Shown here: piece after piece, positions 15,318-34,543 of the stretch
How the letters are laid out: each line of letters begins with the position of its first letter
Numbering within the stretch: the stretch's first letter is position 1
Assembly (NCBI RefSeq): GCF_001194135.2
Contig: NC_068981.1
Coordinates: 180,043,310-180,079,804, forward strand
Reading direction: 5' to 3'
From: Octopus bimaculoides
Taxonomy: Eukaryota
Length of the DNA: 36,495 nt
Program-made: the position numbers and the translations under genes
Notes under the pieces: generated by a model
Told to the model about the DNA's origin: nothing
The model's database searches: none
What the model saw: only the letters and a program-made list of their open reading frames with translations

Positions 15318-15983
15318 TAGTAGTAGTANNNNNNNNNNNNNNNNNNNNNNNNNNNNNNNNNNNNNNNNNNNNNNNNNNNNNNNNNNNNNNNNNNNNNNNN
15401 NNNNNNNNNNNNNNNNNNNNNNNNNNNNNNNNNNNNNNNNNNNNNNNNNNNNNNNNNNNNNNNNNNNNNNNNNNNNNNNNNNNNNNNNNNNNNNNNNNNN
15501 NNNNNNNNNNNNNNNNNNNNNNNNNNNNNNNNNNNNNNNNNNNNNNNNNNNNNNNNNNNNNNNNNNNNNNNNNNNNNNNNNNNNNNNNNNNNNNNNNNNN
15601 NNNNNNNNNNNNNNNNNNNNNNNNNNNNNNNNNNNNNNNNNNNNNNNNNNNNNNNNNNNNNNNNNNNNNNNNNNNNNNNNNNNNNNNNNNNNNNNNNNNN
15701 NNNNNNNNNNNNNNNNNNNNNNNNNNNNNNNNNNNNNNNNNNNNNNNNNNNNNNNNNNNNNNNNNNNNNNNNNNNNNNNNNNNNNNNNNNNNNNNNNNNN
15801 NNNNNNNNNNNNNNNNNNNNNNNNNNNNNNNNNNNNNNNNNNNNNNNNNNNNNNNNNNNNNNNNNNNNNNNNNNNNNNNNNNNNNNNNNNNNNNNNNNNN
15901 NNNNNNNNNNNNNNNNNNNNNNNNNNNNNNNNNNNNNNGTGGTGGTGGTGGTGGTGGTGGTGGTGACGGTGGTGGTGATGGTG

Positions 15984-16019
<36 letters not shown>

Positions 16020-16350
16020 ACAGCTATAAAATTTACTTCTAACTGCGAAGTTACTTAAAAGTGCAATACTGGAAACGTTCAAAAGCAGCAGCCGCAATAC
16101 CATCCATGTCAGCACCAGCGCTGAAATTCGCTACCGACACCACCACCACCACCACCACTACTACTACTGCTACTACTACCACTACTACTACTACCACTAT
16201 TACTACAGCCGCTGCTGTTACTACTACTATTGCTACTAGTATAACTGCTGCTGCTGCTCGTATCGCTGTTCTTTCCGCTTGCTCATGCAGCTAATACAGC
16301 CACCACCCACACCGTCCTCGCCACCACTGCTTCCACCTCCATCACCATCA
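15279..16350. repeat. Compound trinucleotide repeats (GCA/GTA/GGT; ACC/ACT/GCT) around a gap
   Basis: Direct reading. Confidence 0.9.
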
Positions 16351-16753
16351 ATAATATTGATTAGTAAAACACAGTAAGAAATCTGGATTTAATTGCTTTT
16401 CGCAACTATTGTGTTTTTTTTTCTTTTATTTTTGTTTGTATTTTTGATTTTGTTTTCTTTATTATTATTTTTTTTCTTTTTTTTACTTCAACGAACCGAG
16501 ACTAACCAGATTTCTTCGATTTCTGGTTCTTGTTCAAGATATTTCACACTCGATTTGGACGGTGGTTGTCCTTGGCAACCGCATGAACGTCACAACAACC
16601 TATTGCTTTTCTCCATTTTTAATCTATAACATAAATTGCTTTTATTTTTGTTTGTTTTATTTAGAGTAGGGTTTTAATATTTCTTGTTTTTTTTTTGTTT
16701 GTTTGTTTTTCTAGTTTCTTACCTATATTNNNNNNNNNNNNNNNNNNNNNNNN

Positions 16754-17251
16754 AGAAACGTTAGTGCACAAGGCGGCGAACTGGCAGAAACGTTAGAACG
16801 CCGGGCAAAATGCTTAGCGGTATTTCGTCTGCCGTTACGTTCTGCGTTCAAATTCCGCTGAGGTCGACTTCGCCTTTCATCCTTTCGGGGTCGATAAATA
16901 AAGTACCAGTTACGCACTGGAGTCGATGTAATCGACTTAATCCCTTTGTCTGTCCTTGTTTGTCCCCTCTATGTTTAGCCCCTTGTGGGCAATAAAGAAA
17001 TAAGAAACGTTAGTGCACAAGGCGGCGAACTGGCAGAAACGTTAGAACGCCGGGCAAAATGCTTAGCGGTATTTCGTCTGCTGCTACGTTCTGAGTTCAA
17101 ATTCCGCCGAGGTCGACTTTGCCTTTCATCTTTCAGGGTCGATTAAATAAGTACCAAGTTACGCATTGGGGTCGATATTATCGTCTTAATCCCTTTGTCT
17201 CTCCTTGTTTGTCTCCTCTGTGTGTAGCCCCTTGTGGGCAGTAAATATATA
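16754..17251 (+). mobile_element. Two tandem 249-bp units of tRNA-derived SINE family 2 with an atypical pyrimidine-rich tail
   Basis: Units start at 16754 and 17003, about 90% identical. Head ggcggcgaactggcagaaacgttag (A box), B box gttcaaattcc, tail ccctttgtctgtccttgtttgtc...aataaagaaata. Confidence 0.9.
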
Positions 17252-17430
17252 AGAAACGTTCGTGCATCAAAAACAAAATGCTTAACGGAATTTCAGCAAA
17301 TCCCACCGGGATCAACTTTGCCTATCATCCTTCCGAGATCGATAAAATATAGTCCCTATCAAGTACTGAAATCGATATAATCGAGTTGCAACCGGCCCCA
17401 AAATTTTGGCCTTCTGCCAAAACTTGTTAC
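17252..17430 (+). mobile_element. Older, decayed SINE family 2 body (host of the tandem units)
   Basis: agaaacgttcgtgcatc...aaaatgcttaacggaatttc...gatcaactttgcctatcatcc...aaattttggccttctgccaaaa is collinear with family 2 and has the usual tail. Confidence 0.7.
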
Positions 17431-17699: not shown

Positions 17700-18535
17700 C
17701 TGTCGAACCTTATAGTTTTACTGTTCTCTCTCTTGGGCTTCGATGGAGGTCAACTTGCCAGCTTGCACCTAAGAACATTCGGACCAGGGCCTATGGGCAA
17801 TTACCTAAAGTCCCTGGCATGGCAGTGATACAGAGGTGCTTTACCTGTTCGAGATAAGCTCTTTAGGCATGGTTCTTTTTCCTCGCCGACTTGTCCAAGA
17901 TGTGGGCAGGACAGTGAAACTGTTCTGGACGCAATTGTACAATGTCCGAAGATTTCGGAACTCTGGGTTTATGTCGAACACTTGCTGTCACATCTGAGAA
18001 GAGTGCAACTGTCGACCGAATCTATAATTAGGATTGTTCTGCCGCCCTCCCTGAATAGGGAAGAGAGGGCTTGTTTTCTCTCGGTAGTAGCTATCGCGAA
18101 AGAGGTAGTATGGAAGACGAGAGTGAACGGGATCATGACAGGCATTTTTATCTCCAGCTTTGGGTTAGTTAACTTTTTCCTTTTCCACATGAAAAGAAAA
18201 ATAAGGCTGGAGAAGAAATGCCTGTCGCACGGTGTGTTTCGGAAAAGATGGAAGTCTGTAGCAAGTGTGTTTGAGAGTGGAAGAACTTGATTAAGTGAGA
18301 ATATAAAAGGAAAAATAAAGTCTTCAGTGTGAGAACGTGGTTTGTGGGTTCAACCACGTCCTCCGCTTCACTTTTGTTAACCATCCGTTTATTTTATCAT
18401 TATTTATTTTTTGGAATTTTTAACGTTCATCCTTCACTCTGTTACTCTCATTCGCTACCTGACCCCTTGTCTGTTTGTCTGTCCTTGTTTCGTCCTCTCT
18501 TCATTTAAACCGGTATTTGGTGAATAAAGAAAAGA
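17700..18535 (+). mobile_element. 3' end of an L1/Tx1-like LINE (C-terminal zinc-knuckle region plus 3' UTR)
   Basis: GALPVRDKLFRHG...CPRC (17892-17903) GQDSETVLDAIVQCPKISELWVYVE continues into ORF 17982-18290. T-rich 3' UTR ends in aataaagaaaag. Confidence 0.8.
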
Positions 18536-18555
18536 GTTTTAATGTTCTCTTCAGA

Positions 18556-18698
18556 GCATGAGTTCAAATTCCGCTGAAGTCGACTTTGCTTTCATCCTTT
18601 CGGGGTCGATAAACTAAGCACCAGTTGCGTACTGGGGTCGATCTAATCGACTGGCCACCTTCCCCCAAATTTCGGGCTTTGTGCCTAGAATGGAAAAG
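18556..18698 (+). mobile_element. 5'-truncated SINE family 2 with 15-bp target-site duplication
   Basis: aatgttctcttcaga at 18541-18555 and 18699-18713. Usual tail cccccaaatttcgggctttgtgcctagaatggaaaag. Confidence 0.9.
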
Positions 18699-18889
18699 AA
18701 TGTTCTCTTCAGAACCATCAAGAAAATATATGGATCGAAATAACTGTAACAAGGCATTGTAATATTCATTTGAGTATCAGCATTGGGTTTTCTAATAACA
18801 GGCATCCACCAATACCCGGCGCCGGCGCATAAAATGTAAGTGGAAACTTTTGGTACTTACCCTATATATTAGCGGTTTCTTATTTAGGT

Positions 18890-19075
18890 ACAAGGCCAGA
18901 ACTTCTCATGGGAAGAGACCAGTCGATATCATCGAATCTAAAACTTGACTGCTACTTTATCCTATTGATCCCGAATAGATATAAAGTAATGTTGACTCCT
19001 GAGGAAATGGTACTCAGAATGAAATGATGCGGAAGAAATTTTTCGATGCTTTAATGATTCTGAAAGCTCATCGTT
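18890..19075 (-). mobile_element. Decayed SINE family 2
   Basis: acaaggccagaac...cagtcgatatcatcga...ttgatcccgaa...gttgactcctgagg...ctcagaatg parallels the reverse complement of family 2. Confidence 0.55.
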
Positions 19076-19799
19076 TCCACCTTGTTTATTAATGAAAAGA
19101 AAAACCCGAATTTGAATTCCTTTTCCCTCTTTTGGTGGCGATCAACTTTAGAAAATTGGAAATTATTTCAATCTAATTAAGCATTGCAGCATGTCTGCCC
19201 ATTTCTTAATCTCCACATTTTTCCAAAGAATGGAGCATTCACCAACTGTTTGCGATATACTGCAAATGATCCTGCTACATCTGAGTGACCAAAAGTTAAA
19301 TAATAATAACAATAAGGACAAATTTCACTAGGAAAATTTGGAAGGGGAAGTAAGAGATATGAGATACAGATCAATCCAGAAGTTACATGTACTGCACAGA
19401 GATAACGATATAAAGGCTTCTAACATTGACACAAATGCAGCAGTTTCAGGGAAAAGACATATAAAGTAGTAAACTGGTTCTTGTGTAATCGGTCTCCATG
19501 CTTGGTAGCATTTAACTATGGATCCATGATTGATGAAAAAGAAACTCGGGTGAATAAGACTTCAATACAGAATGTAAAGAAAGGCGGTAGGTGCAACAAA
19601 ATTCTTCAAGGTAGAATCGGTTTAGTGCTTTATAATGATACCTTATGAATTAATTATGCCCTTCTCTCTTTCGTTATAAGGCCAAATGTCATTGGGATCG
19701 ACATAACTCTCAAATGAAAATTACCTTAGAAGCTTCGGTTAAATGCCATGAACAACGGGCCATCATCTATAATAGCGTTTCGGACCACTCCCTAATGTA

Positions 19800-22473: not shown

Positions 22474-23317
22474 AGTTAAATTGTCGCCATTCCATATTTT
22501 TAATTTCGCACATGCGCATTGTTTGTTTTTTTATTTTGTCAGTTGGACACCGTCTGTGAGAAACACACTACCATGACGCCATTCATTCTGCCAAAAATTT
22601 GGAAACAACATGCTGAACGGCTGGCATTGGTACCGGAAGCTCCAATACGAACATTTCAGAGTGTTTGGGTATCAATCTGAGGACATGTACCGAGAGTGAT
22701 AAAAATCAAACGTCCAGTCAACATCACAGTGTTTGGACTCATAAATAGTGATGGCGACGTTATGTTTCCATTCATCTCCCAACACGGCCTCTGACTCAAC
22801 AAAGAGGCCTGCATCAAGTGCCTGGAGGAGATAGTGCTGCCCTTGGTCAAGAGGGTGGCTGCTGGAAGACCCCATATCTGGCAACAAGACTCTGCCCCAT
22901 TCCACACAAGCAGGAGAAGCCCAGTCATAGCTGTCATACCATTTCTGCGACCATATCTGGTCCTAACATCTGGCCACCTAACTCCCCAGACCTCAAACCT
23001 ATTGGTTATTATGTGTGGAGCGAAGTTGAGCAAGAGACCAACAAAACTCTTTGTAACACTGAAGACGAATTGAAGGCAAGGATTATGTTAGCATTCACCA
23101 GTTAAAACAAGGAGATCGTCCAGAAGTGCTGCAGGAGATACCGAAGTCGTCTAAAAGCCGTGGCTGAAGCTGATGGCAATTTTATTGAATAAATTTATTC
23201 TTTGGTATTTCAAGATATTTTTATGTAGTTTTGGTGAATATATCTGTTGAAATGAGACGTCAGTGATTTTTCCATTTTTGCGGAATGTATACGATAGCTT
23301 ATTCACTGCACCCTCTG
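22474..23317 (+). mobile_element. Tc1/mariner DD37D (maT)-like transposon, internally deleted and degenerate
   Basis: IWQQDSAPFH, IWPPNSPDLKPIGYYVW, ELKARIM...RSRLKAVAEADGNFIE*. Right TIR-like gcttattcactgcaccc; left TIR partly lost in (TA)n. Confidence 0.85.
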
Positions 23318-25538: not shown

Positions 25539-26179
25539 ACACACAAATATATATATATATATATTTATACTATGATTTTACGCTTATAATATATAATAGT
25601 GAATTGGGCCGTGAGATACTTGTTGATAACGTAAAGCTTTATATAAACTGTTAACCACCAAAACAAAGATAATATGCTGAAGCATTATCTTTTGAAACTG
25701 ATCTTTATTTCTCGTTAGACGTAAAATATAATACAGGCAAAATGTGCTTACCTTTCTTGATAAACATTTCCATATAGATTATCAATATCGAAAATTATTT
25801 AACATAAATAGTCTTAATACTTGTAAGTTTATGATAACAATATTTTATCAAGAATCATTGGATAGTAAAGAAAAAGTATATAATACTATCGGTAGTTGTT
25901 TAAATATATATTTATGCTTTTCTTGCGAGTACAATTCACAGATATTTAGTGCAAATATGCTTTCAAATTCCATTAAGAAGACTAAAACTAGTATGATATA
26001 AACACTGGTATGAGAGAAGGAAAATCTACATTGATCATAACTCCATCTTTCTAGAGCAAATTCAAAATAAACAGAAACATCACATCCTATAGGAAACCGT
26101 ATACGAACTATCATGATATTGTAAGCTATGCATTTCCGAGACCTTTCCTATATCAAACAACGCCTTCACATTTTGACAC

Positions 26180-26345
26180 AAGGCCAGTAACTTCAAGGAA
26201 GGGTGTAAGTTGATTTCATCAACCCCAATGCTCAACTGGTACTCATTTCATCGACCCTAAAACGATGAAAGGCACACAGGGACTTCACTGTAATTGTTTT
26301 CGGAACATAAAATACTTCAAGAAAAGTCGCTCAGCATCTTATATC
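26180..26345 (-). mobile_element. Decayed SINE family 2
   Basis: acaaggccag...ttcatcaaccccaatgctcaactggtactcatttcatcgaccctaaaacgatgaaaggc. Confidence 0.65.
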
Positions 26346-30355: not shown

Positions 30356-31233
30356 CAGGTTGTGTTGGATAAATTATCACCATTTTATATTTTTAATTTC
30401 GCGCTTGTATATTGCTTGTCTTTGATTCTGCCGACTACACAGTATGATAGATCAGGTGGGCACCGTCTGGGAAAAAAACAACGCCGTGATGCAATTCATT
30501 CTGCCAGAAATTTGGAAACGACATGTTGTACGGCTTACCATTTGCTCGGAAGCTCCAATACGAACAGATGGTGAGCACACAGGTCAACTGTTGGCTTGCC
30601 GTCTCCCCAAAACATGTACCGAGAGTGATTAAAATCAAACATCCAATCAACATTATGGTGTTTGGAGTGATCACTAGTGATGGCAACGTTATGTCCGCAT
30701 TCATCTTCCCACACAGCCTCAGATTCAACACAGAGGCCTACATCAAGTGCCTGGAGGAGGTAGTGCTGCCCTGGGTCAAGAGGGCGGCTGCTGAAAGACT
30801 CTATATCTGGCAACAGGACACTGCACCATTCCATACAAGCAGGGGAACCTAGTCATGGCTGTCATATACAATTTCTGTGACCACATTACCCCTAACATCT
30901 GGCGACCTAACCCCCCAGAATGCAACTGCCTTGTGGGGTGCAATTTAGCGAGAGACCAACAAAACCCTTTGTAACAGCAAAGATGAACTGAAGCCAAGGA
31001 TTATGGCAACAGTCACCATTTTAAACAAGGAGACCGTCCAGAAGAGTTGCAGGAAACTCAGAAGTCGTCTGGAGACCGTGGTTGAAACCAATGGCGATTT
31101 TATTGAATAAATTTAGTCTTTAGTATTTCAAGATATTTTAATCTCATTTTCGTAAATATATCTGTTTAAATGAGATGTCAATGTCATTTTCTTCTTTACG
31201 CAATGTAGACGACAGGTTATTCACCGCATCCTG
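30356..31233 (+). mobile_element. Second DD37D (maT)-like transposon with both TIRs, internally deleted
   Basis: TA-caggttgtgttggataaattatc ... gacaggttattcaccgcatcctg (about 23-bp imperfect TIR). HVPRVIKIKHPINIMVFGVITSDG...YIWQQDTAPFH. Removing a 2-nt insertion gives 37 residues between the second D and the expected third D position. Confidence 0.85.
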
Positions 31234-33334: not shown

Positions 33335-33500
33335 TAACAATCCTTTCTACTATAGCCGCAACGCCTGAAATTTTGGTGGATGGGTAAGTCGATTACATTG
33401 ACACGAGTGTTCTCTACTGGTACTTATTTTATCGACCCCGAAAGGATAATGGTAAAAGTCGACCTCAGCGGGGTTTGAATTAAGAACGTGAAAACGTACA
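33335..33500 (-). mobile_element. SINE family 2 (usual tail)
   Basis: cctgaaattttgg...gtcgattacattgac...ttttatcgaccccgaaagg...gtcgacctcagcgggg tttgaatt. Confidence 0.75.
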
Positions 33501-33599: not shown

Positions 33600-33795
33600 T
33601 TCTATAGGCACAAGGTCTGAAATTTTGGGAGAGGGGACCAGTCGATTATATCGACTCCAGTACGCAGCTGGTACTTATCTTATCAACTGCGAGATGAAAA
33701 GCAAAGCCAGCCTCAGAACTCAGAACATAATGACTGACAGAGAGCTGCCAAGTGCTTTGCTCGGCGTACTATCGGTTATGCCAGCTCGCCGCCTG
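33600..33795 (-). mobile_element. SINE family 2 with head (usual tail)
   Basis: ggcacaaggtctgaaattttggg... through gccagctcgccgcc, the reverse complement of the head ggcggcgagctggc. Confidence 0.75.
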
Positions 33796-34065
33796 CATCA
33801 ATACATTAATAATAAGTATGATTTCTAATAAATGTTTGGAGGAGTGTCAAAAAAGGCAAATATGAGCTCATATATTAAAATGTCACAACATTTGAAATTA
33901 TAGATTTGATTATTACAGACATGGGGAATAGTATAAAGCTGTTCTTTACACAAAATTGAATACATAAACATACACATACATCATCACAATCCAACACCAT
34001 TGTAAAATATCAGACCTTGTTTGACCACACTCTTGCACCAATGCAAAAATATGCCCCAATATGAT

Positions 34066-34319: not shown

Positions 34320-34543
34320 CAGGGGTTCGACAAAATATTGGAAACACCTTAAAATTTCAAACAAATTTATTTTAATATGGGATAGGACCGCCTTTGGCAA
34401 TAATTACACCTTGAATTCTACGAAGTATGGACTCGTACAAGGTTTGTATTGCTTCCAAAGGAATTTTTGTCCATTCTTCAGCTAAAACAATCTCCAGTTC
34501 TTGTAGCGATGACGATGTGAAGCTCCTGGCGAACAGTTTTTGT
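34320..34543 (-). mobile_element. Tc1-like transposon 3' end
   Basis: Minus strand LQELEIVLAEEWTKIPLEAIQTLYESILRRIQGVIIAKGGPIPY*. Terminus TA-caggggttcgacaaaatattggaaacacc. The remainder is lost in a gap. Confidence 0.85.

What the first reader, a model, noticed from the sequence alone, without database searches (positions are those of the whole stretch)
16754..17430. Apparent self-targeting SINE: repeated insertion at one site in the A-box region of its own family
Seen: layout T-E-T-E-T'-[rest of an older SINE], with T = agaaacgttagtgca at 16754 and 17003 and T' = agaaacgttcgtgca at 17252. Both young units end exactly at the start of T. T matches the old host variant (...gtgca) rather than the units' own internal site (...gaacgcc), as expected for a host-derived TSD. 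The units differ at about 10% of positions. Established: Tx1-clade LINEs are often sequence-specific and successive insertions regenerate the target. Inference: this SINE variant uses a Tx1 endonuclease that cuts tRNA-like SINE heads, so it parasitises and inactivates its relatives and builds arrays. Caveat: the first ~80 bp of unit 1 are identical to unit 2 and abut a gap, so the first T could be an assembly artefact.
Basis: partly seen in the sequence, partly recalled or inferred. Interest (0 to 1): 0.75.

Follow-up and report, generated by a model that had tools for sequence, protein, structure and literature searches.

The report
SINE dimer nested in older SINE
Two head-to-tail copies of an octopod SINE, separated by one copy of their 15-bp target duplication, sit inside the promoter region of an older related SINE. 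This is a known, ordinary kind of transposon dimer, and nothing I could test shows that the family aims at its own relatives.

Summary
The layout T-E-T-E-T'-[rest of an older SINE] is in the sequence exactly as described: period 249, with T at 16754 and 17003 and T' at 17252. T carries the host copy's private variant (...GTGCA), so it is a host-derived target-site duplication.

Two details matter.
- The first 79 bp of the two units are identical and start right after a 24-N gap, while the other 170 bp differ by 13.5%.
- The units are unequally decayed (16 private changes in the right unit, 5 in the left, p=0.027). This fits two events of different age better than one duplication.

The self-targeting idea found no support. 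The only other element in the window with this tail is a 5'-truncated L1/Tx1-type LINE. It sits at an unrelated 16-bp target. So do every LINE 3' end that reaches flanking DNA and about 20 same-tail SINE copies from related octopods.

Best reading (about 0.4): two retrotranspositions at one re-usable nick site, a known way of making transposon dimers. Unequal exchange between the duplications (about 0.27) and an assembly error (about 0.2) remain open.

The parts
16730..16753 (.). 24-N assembly gap directly upstream of the first T. It would have to hold the host SINE's missing 5' 17 bp, or further units.
16754..16768 (+). T copy 1 (AGAAACGTTAGTGCA). It is the first base of the contig and part of the 79-bp stretch identical to 17003-17081, so it is not independent evidence.
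16769..17002 (+). Unit E1: a full-length A-tail SINE with a tRNA-like head (CAAGGCGGCGAACTGGCAGAAACGTTAGAACGCC), a B box (GCGTTCAAATTCC), the shared core, and the LINE-type tail CCCTTTGTCTGTCC...CCCCTTGTGGGCAATAAAGAAATA. It is the less decayed unit.
17003..17017 (+). T copy 2, the target duplication sandwiched between the units. Its last 3 nt (GCA) may belong to the SINE's own 5' end, so the duplication is 12-15 bp.
17018..17251 (+). Unit E2: the same SINE subfamily. Its last 170 bp carry 16 private changes against 5 in E1, but its first 64 bp are identical to E1.
17252..17266 (+). T' (AGAAACGTTCGTGCA), the right-hand target duplication. It has one derived change (A to C) and is continuous with the host SINE.
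17267..17430 (+). Rest of the older host SINE (B-tail type: ...GGCCCCAAAATTTTGGCCTTCTGCC...). It is strongly diverged and has a roughly 20-bp internal deletion. The 3' end is approximate.
17714..17729 (+). 5' target duplication of the neighbouring LINE fragment (AGTTTTACTGTTCTCT).
17730..18534 (+). 5'-truncated LINE: the C-terminus of ORF2 with zf-RVT, then a 3' UTR ending in an A-type tail (...TTGTCTGTCCTTGTTT...GGTGAATAAAGAAAAG). This tail type is shared with E1 and E2, so it represents the partner LINE lineage.
18535..18550 (+). 3' target duplication of the LINE fragment (AGTTTTAATGTTCTCT). It is unrelated to T.

Best explanation
An A-tail SINE (E2) retrotransposed into an older B-tail relative. 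The first nick fell between GGC and AGAAACG, inside the A-box-like part of the host's tRNA-like head. The second nick fell about 15 bp downstream and produced the duplication T/T'.

The left junction (host 5' part plus T) kept the original target intact. A second, later retrotransposition of the same subfamily (E1) used the same nick, giving T-E1-T-E2-T'.

The identical 79 bp may mean that the second event was completed by a template switch from the SINE RNA onto the homologous resident head. That would copy T plus 64 bp of head afresh. Alternatively, the assembler collapsed that stretch.

This is re-use of one site, as in other transposon dimers. It is not a family-wide aim at SINE heads.

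Shown: the layout, the host origin of T, the unequal decay, and the diversity of other targets. Inferred: the order of events, re-use of the nick, and the template switch.
For: - Layout and coordinates.
- T carries the host-specific GTGCA variant.
- A 15-bp duplication is typical here. The neighbouring LINE has 16 bp and a B-tail SINE has 15 bp.
- Polarised differences: E2 derived at 16 sites, E1 at 5, with 2 ambiguous. Binomial p=0.027. Equal ages are therefore disfavoured, and the left unit is the younger one, as expected if the intact left-hand target was re-used.
- T copy 2 keeps the ancestral A, while T' has a derived C.
- Site stacking is common in this LINE lineage. In 42.8 kb of Argonauta hians there are 8 head-to-tail junctions among 38 elements, against 0.34 expected.
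- Literature: sequential insertions that sandwich a target duplication for SINEU-3/Tx1-Mar (PMC4494074). Tandem dimers by double insertion, including the non-LTR element jockey (PMC5932611).
Against: - Only one locus, in a short-read scaffold with 18 gaps.
- The first T and 64 bp of head are identical between the units, which a plain full-length second insertion does not predict. E2's head should carry about 6 private changes (P about 0.002; my estimate from the counts).
- Both nicks would have to coincide in two events.
- A less decayed E1 is also what a consensus-like assembly of multi-copy reads would give.
- The outgroups used for polarising are few, and come from other subfamilies or species.
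- The Argonauta stacks mostly abut without a sandwiched duplication, so they may arise differently.
- The host's 5' part upstream of the first T is unseen (gap).
Confidence: 0.4

Rival explanations
1. There was a single insertion, followed by tandem duplication of the [SINE + duplication] unit. The cause would be unequal exchange or replication slippage between the two 15-bp target duplications. It may be part of a longer array hidden by the gap, with later partial homogenisation of the first 79 bp.
For: - The product T-E-T-E-T', with identical unit boundaries and equal unit length (249 bp), is exactly what exchange between T and T' gives.
- No coincidence of two independent pairs of nicks is needed.
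- The gap next to the array could hide more units.
- Conversion between adjacent units could explain the identical 79 bp.
Against: - Private changes are unequal (16 versus 5, p=0.027), whereas two copies at one locus should decay equally.
- 15 bp is very short for homologous exchange.
- The 79-bp identity needs an extra event.
Confidence: 0.27
2. The dimer is an assembly artefact. The left unit, or at least its first 79 bp, was built from reads of other copies of this abundant SINE during contig extension or gap closing. The real locus would then hold one nested SINE.
For: - The contig starts exactly at T, directly after a gap.
- The first 79 bp are identical to the second unit (P about 1e-5).
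- The left unit is consensus-like.
- The scaffold is heavily gapped, with 18 gaps in 36.5 kb.
Against: - The junction E1-tail/T/E2-head lies in continuous sequence. It needs real reads that join this tail, the host-specific T and a SINE head, so such a junction must exist somewhere in the genome.
- E1's last 170 bp have 5 private changes of their own.
Confidence: 0.2
3. The partner LINE's endonuclease is sequence-specific for the GGC|AGAAACGTT motif of tRNA-like SINE heads. This SINE subfamily therefore regularly lands in, and inactivates, its relatives and builds arrays there.
For: - Both copies of this subfamily in the window lie at T.
- The contig break exactly at T would also follow if T-E junctions were common in the genome.
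- Target-specific Tx1 lineages and their SINEs exist and do form such tandems (PMC4494074).
- L1-Tx1 families are recently active in Octopus vulgaris (PMC13282606).
Against: - The two copies are one locus, not two observations.
- All three LINE 3' ends of this tail type that reach flanking DNA lie at other, mutually unrelated sequences. A fourth is followed directly by a SINE of another family, and a fifth ends in an (ATT)n run that reaches the contig end.
- About 20 same-tail SINE flanks in Argonauta are diverse.
- The units' own internal AGAAACGTTAG sites and two other family heads are unoccupied.
- Tx1 clade membership is untested.
Confidence: 0.08

Closest known systems
SINEU-3 / Tx1-Mar in crocodilians (Kojima 2015, PMC4494074)
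   Same: A SINE mobilised by an L1/Tx1-type LINE, with tandem copies that sandwich one target duplication, read as sequential insertion at a regenerated target that lies inside another transposon.
   Different: There, 77 of 88 copies sit directly in one Mariner family, 9 more adjoin SINEU or Tx1 copies that do, and the LINEs share that target. Here there is one locus, and every other element with the tail sits elsewhere. The target here is a SINE head of the same superfamily.
Transposon tandem dimers by double insertion (McGurk and Barbash 2018, PMC5932611; R1 arrays in rDNA)
   Same: Head-to-tail copies separated by exactly one target duplication. This is also seen for a non-LTR element without extreme specificity (jockey). 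Such dimers can seed satellites.
   Different: Those cases rest on population read data and on different 5' truncations of the two copies. Here both units are full length, and the only sign of independence is unequal decay.
tRNA-derived SINEs of octopods with LINE-matched 3' tails (SINE2 type; first described in octopus by Ohshima and Okada in the 1990s, from my own knowledge)
   Same: A tRNA-like head with a B box, a conserved core, a tail shared with a LINE, and 10-17-bp target duplications.
   Different: None as far as tested. The units look like ordinary members, and only their arrangement is unusual.
Chimeric L1 insertions made by template switching or annealing to a resident copy (U6-L1 chimeras, L1-L1 chimeras; from my own knowledge)
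   Same: The proposed completion of the second insertion on the resident homologous head would be this kind of event. It would explain the freshly duplicated 79 bp.
   Different: This is inferred only. Known L1-L1 chimeras usually delete the DNA in between rather than produce a tandem.

Membership tests
Target-specific Tx1-clade LINE/SINE pair | The partner LINE falls in the Tx1 clade in an RT phylogeny | not testable with these tools
   The Argonauta relative has Exo_endo_phos, RVT_1 and zf-RVT domains. Its best solved relative is human L1 ORF2p. That places it in the L1/Tx1 group only. No Tx1 reference sequences were available.
Target-specific Tx1-clade LINE/SINE pair | Most LINE copies are flanked by one and the same target sequence | tested here: not met
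   Five LINE 3' ends were examined. Three reach unrelated flanks: AGTTTTAATG (window), CTTCTCTGTC (L027) and (ATT)n-ACAATTTC (L001). One is followed directly by another SINE after (ATT)n (L001 fragment). One runs off the contig in (ATT)n (L034)..
Target-specific Tx1-clade LINE/SINE pair | Most SINE copies are flanked by that target | tested here: inconclusive
   Only this locus carries the octopus A-tail subfamily in the data I could reach. Same-tail SINEs in Argonauta have diverse targets, but they belong to another genus and another subfamily.
Target-specific Tx1-clade LINE/SINE pair | Tandem copies that sandwich one target duplication | tested here: met
   E1-T-E2-T' at 16769-17266.
tRNA-derived SINE with a LINE-matched tail | A tRNA-like head with internal A and B boxes | tested here: inconclusive
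   GAGTTCAAATTCC fits the B-box consensus, and TGGCAGAAACG fits the A box only partly (consensus from my own knowledge). ARAGORN and Rfam report nothing.
tRNA-derived SINE with a LINE-matched tail | A 3' tail shared with a LINE, and flanking target duplications | tested here: met
   The tail matches the 3' end of the LINE fragment at 18474-18532 at 78% over 59 aligned positions. The LINE 3' ends in L001, L027 and L034 carry the same tail motif. T/T' flank E2.
Transposon tandem dimer by double insertion | The two copies arose independently (different age or truncation) | tested here: inconclusive
   16 versus 5 private changes, p=0.027, favours independence. Both units are full length, the first 79 bp are identical, and the assembly is uncertain.
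Tandem duplication by unequal exchange between target duplications | Both units equally diverged from their common ancestor | tested here: not met
   Relative-rate count of 16 versus 5. Weak outgroups and assembly effects could bias it.
False duplication at an assembly gap | Read depth and spanning reads contradict the two-unit structure | not testable with these tools
   No reads were available. Warning signs are the contig start at T and the identical 79 bp.

The most novel reading that the evidence does not exclude
The octopus A-tail SINE subfamily and its L1/Tx1-type LINE have a real, if partial, preference for the GGC|AGAAACGTT motif in the A-box region of SINE heads of their own superfamily. 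Under this reading the family preferentially disrupts the promoters of its relatives, and dimers like this one are common genome-wide.
Probability: 0.1. Interest if true: 0.6.

Novelty: new member of a known kind. Interest (0 to 1): 0.2.

Why it matters
If the dimer is real, it is one more example of how retrotransposon double insertions create tandem repeats that can later grow into satellites, here in a cephalopod genome rich in SINEs. It would matter more only if the site preference proved to be family-wide. That would be a SINE lineage that competes with its relatives by hitting their internal promoters. It would also be a natural case of a sequence-specific APE-type endonuclease in molluscs. 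The present data do not show this.

Tried and rejected
- **DNA pattern scans.** I scanned the metagenome, prokaryotic-genome and viral collections for the SINE tail or core. Only chance hits came back, with no SINE.
- **More sequence of the same species, by the protein route.**
  - A mariner fragment led to one Octopus bimaculoides locus (L024, 45% N) and one ENA contig (L025). Neither holds this SINE.
  - Exact look-up of an ORF inside unit 1 found nothing.
  - A subfamily consensus and a genome-wide flank logo therefore could not be made.
- **RNA-gene finders.** Rfam and ARAGORN give no hit on the SINE heads.
- **T as a 5' leader of the unit.** I considered that T belongs to the SINE transcript rather than to a duplication. 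I rejected this because T carries the host copy's private variant, and because T' continues in register into the host.
- **Insertion into the resident tail, or RT template jumping, as in the Argonauta chains.** I rejected these for this locus because they give abutting elements without a 15-bp host spacer.
- **A possible second T-E-T-E-T case in Argonauta (L030 14817-15323).** It stayed ambiguous, because the 10-nt spacer also aligns to the SINE's own 5' end.
- **Two further LINE loci.** L033 and L035 stop before the LINE tail.

Full report
**What is there.**

The window is a heavily gapped, AT-rich scaffold with 18 N-runs and 29% G+C. Its repeats identify it as octopod.

TRF reports a 249-bp period with 2.1 copies at 16754-17266. 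AGAAACGTTAGTGCA (T) lies at 16754 and 17003, and AGAAACGTTCGTGCA (T') at 17252. Between them lie two 234-bp units, E1 at 16769-17002 and E2 at 17018-17251.

From T' the sequence continues as a diverged SINE of the same superfamily that lacks its first 17 nt or so. The first 79 bp of the two repeats are identical and begin directly after a 24-N gap. The remaining 170 bp differ at 23 positions.

**The family.**

Other copies in the window define a SINE with three parts:
- a tRNA-like head, GCAGGCGGCGAGCTGGCAGAAACGTTAGAACGCC;
- a B box, GAGTTCAAATTCC;
- a conserved core, ...CATCCTTTCGGGGTCGATAAA....

These copies are 18556-18698, 33605-33796 (minus strand, full length), 33341-33489 (minus strand) and 26177-26274 (minus strand).

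The family has two alternative tails. E1 and E2 carry tail A (CCCTTTGTCTGTCC...CCCCTTGTGGGCAATAAAGAAATA). The host copy and all the others carry tail B. Rfam and ARAGORN do not recognise the heads.

The cut site GGC|AGAAACG lies within the stretch that best fits an A box. That judgement rests on my own knowledge of the consensus.

**T is host-derived.**

At the positions after AGAAACGTT, family members read AGAACGCC, AGTACGCC or AGCACGCC. The host copy reads CGTGCATC, and T reads AGTGCA. T therefore comes from this host, as a target duplication should.

Full-length copies begin GCAGGCGG, so the last three bases of T may belong to the SINE. The duplication is then 12-15 bp.

**The partner LINE and its targets.**

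Just downstream, 17730-18534 is a 5'-truncated LINE. Its reading frame ends in a zf-RVT domain (PF13966, E=1e-7), and its 3' end carries tail A. It is flanked by AGTTTTACTGTTCTCT and AGTTTTAATGTTCTCT. This target is unrelated to T.

Protein searches led to relatives in other octopods. A near-complete copy in Argonauta hians (L001 5371-11205) has three reading frames: an ORF1 without a Pfam match, an APE endonuclease, and RT plus zf-RVT. Its nearest solved structure is human L1 ORF2p. The lineage therefore belongs to the L1/Tx1 group, but I could not test Tx1 membership.

Five LINE 3' ends were examined:

| Copy | What follows the tail |
|---|---|
| window | AGTTTTAATG |
| L027 | CTTCTCTGTC |
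| L001, full length | (ATT)n then ACAATTTC |
| L001, fragment | (ATT)n then another SINE |
| L034 | (ATT)n to the contig end |

In 42.8 kb of Argonauta, about 20 SINE copies with this tail have 10-17-bp duplications at diverse, A/T-rich sites. Examples are CTAGCACACATAC, TTTCAAGGAA, TATATTRCATGAYATCC, TTTTAMCGATAAA and ATTTGCTAGCTGG. No T-like sequence occurs in any fetched locus. Nothing here indicates an endonuclease aimed at SINE heads.

**One event or two.**

I polarised the 23 differences using other family copies and LINE tails as outgroups. E2 is derived at 16 sites, E1 at 5, and 2 are ambiguous (two-sided binomial p=0.027).

Two copies made by one duplication should decay equally, so this favours an older E2 and a younger E1 on the left. 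The left side is where the original target (host 5' part plus T) stays intact after a first insertion.

The 64 bp of E2's head are as clean as E1's, although about 6 private changes would be expected there. Three explanations are possible:
- The second event ended with a switch from the SINE RNA onto the homologous resident head. That would copy T plus the head afresh. This is inference, by analogy with chimeric L1 insertions.
- Conversion between the units homogenised the stretch.
- The assembler collapsed the stretch.

**The assembly.**

A contig that starts exactly at T is expected at a fork where two different left contexts meet T. It is also a warning sign. The junction E1-tail/T/E2-head is continuous sequence, and it joins a host-specific T to a SINE head. 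Reads with that junction must therefore exist somewhere in the genome. Whether the left unit is faithfully rebuilt cannot be decided without reads.

**Context from relatives.**

In Argonauta, elements with this tail stack head to tail far more often than chance. There are 8 junctions among 38 elements, against 0.34 expected and a maximum of 3 in 5000 random placements. Two examples:
- a chain of six elements at L001 4481-11205;
- one SINE inserted inside the tail of another at L030 1472-1791.

These stacks abut without a host spacer. They probably reflect priming on resident tails or template jumps, which is a different route from the one needed here. They do show that the machinery often re-uses occupied sites.

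**Comparison with what is known.**

Tandem SINE copies that sandwich a target duplication, read as sequential insertions, are described for SINEU-3 and its Tx1-Mar partners. In that case nearly all copies share one Mariner target (PMC4494074).

Tandem dimers by double insertion are common in Drosophila, including the non-LTR element jockey, and can seed satellites (PMC5932611). L1-Tx1 families are recently active in Octopus vulgaris (PMC13282606).

The present locus fits this known kind. The only new element would be a preference for heads of the SINE's own superfamily, and that rests on a single locus.

**Verdict.**

The nested insertion and a second event at the same site are plausible. The proposed self-targeting endonuclease is unsupported.

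My estimates are:
- double insertion at a re-usable site, about 0.4;
- exchange between the duplications, about 0.27;
- assembly artefact, about 0.2;
- family-wide targeting, about 0.08-0.1.

The decisive data are long reads and a genome-wide flank logo, and these tools could not reach either. Interest is low (0.2).

Noticed in passing
window 18541-18713: A 5'-truncated B-tail SINE (18556-18698) with a perfect 15-bp duplication AATGTTCTCTTCAGA. It inserted only 6 nt downstream of the LINE fragment's 3' end and overlaps the LINE's own target duplication.
   Followed up: partly
L001 4481-11205 (Argonauta hians): A chain of six same-orientation elements that share one tail type: SINE, LINE fragment with (ATT)n, three short tRNA-SINEs, and a near full-length LINE. 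They abut without spacers. Head-to-tail junctions are about 20-fold enriched over random placement in 42.8 kb. This suggests priming on resident tails or RT template jumping.
   Followed up: partly
L030 1472-1791, minus strand (Argonauta hians): A 5'-truncated SINE inserted inside the tail of another SINE, between ...CTTGTGGCTA and ATAGAGAAATCTATTTT. The host's tail resumes after the insert.
   Followed up: partly
L030 14817-15323 (Argonauta hians): Two adjacent SINE copies followed by a 10-nt repeat of the second copy's start (AGGCCAGCAC ... AGATCAGCAC). This is either a second T-E-T-E-T dimer or two units plus the start of a third. The alignment could not decide.
   Followed up: partly
L034 1995-2105; L001 4826-4905 and 11150-11205: In Argonauta, and in a JGI metagenome contig, the LINE tail ends AATAAAAGAAAT followed by an (ATT)n microsatellite. 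The octopus copies in the window end in a short ATA or TATATA instead.
   Followed up: no
protein P0014: A protein labelled 'MAG: Herbaspirillum sp. zinc-binding domain-containing protein' is 60% identical to the Argonauta LINE ORF2. It is almost certainly octopod DNA in a bacterial bin.
   Followed up: no
window 22656-23105, 30435-30852, 34372-34540: Decayed mariner/Tc1-type transposase fragments. The one at 30523-30852 is 68% identical to an annotated Octopus bimaculoides protein, LOC128250757.
   Followed up: partly
window 18921-19120, minus strand: Another old SINE that shares the core and the B-type tail but has a different head.
   Followed up: no
window 15939-16360: A long run of triplet microsatellites (GTG, GTA, CAC, ACT) next to a 610-N gap.
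   Followed up: no
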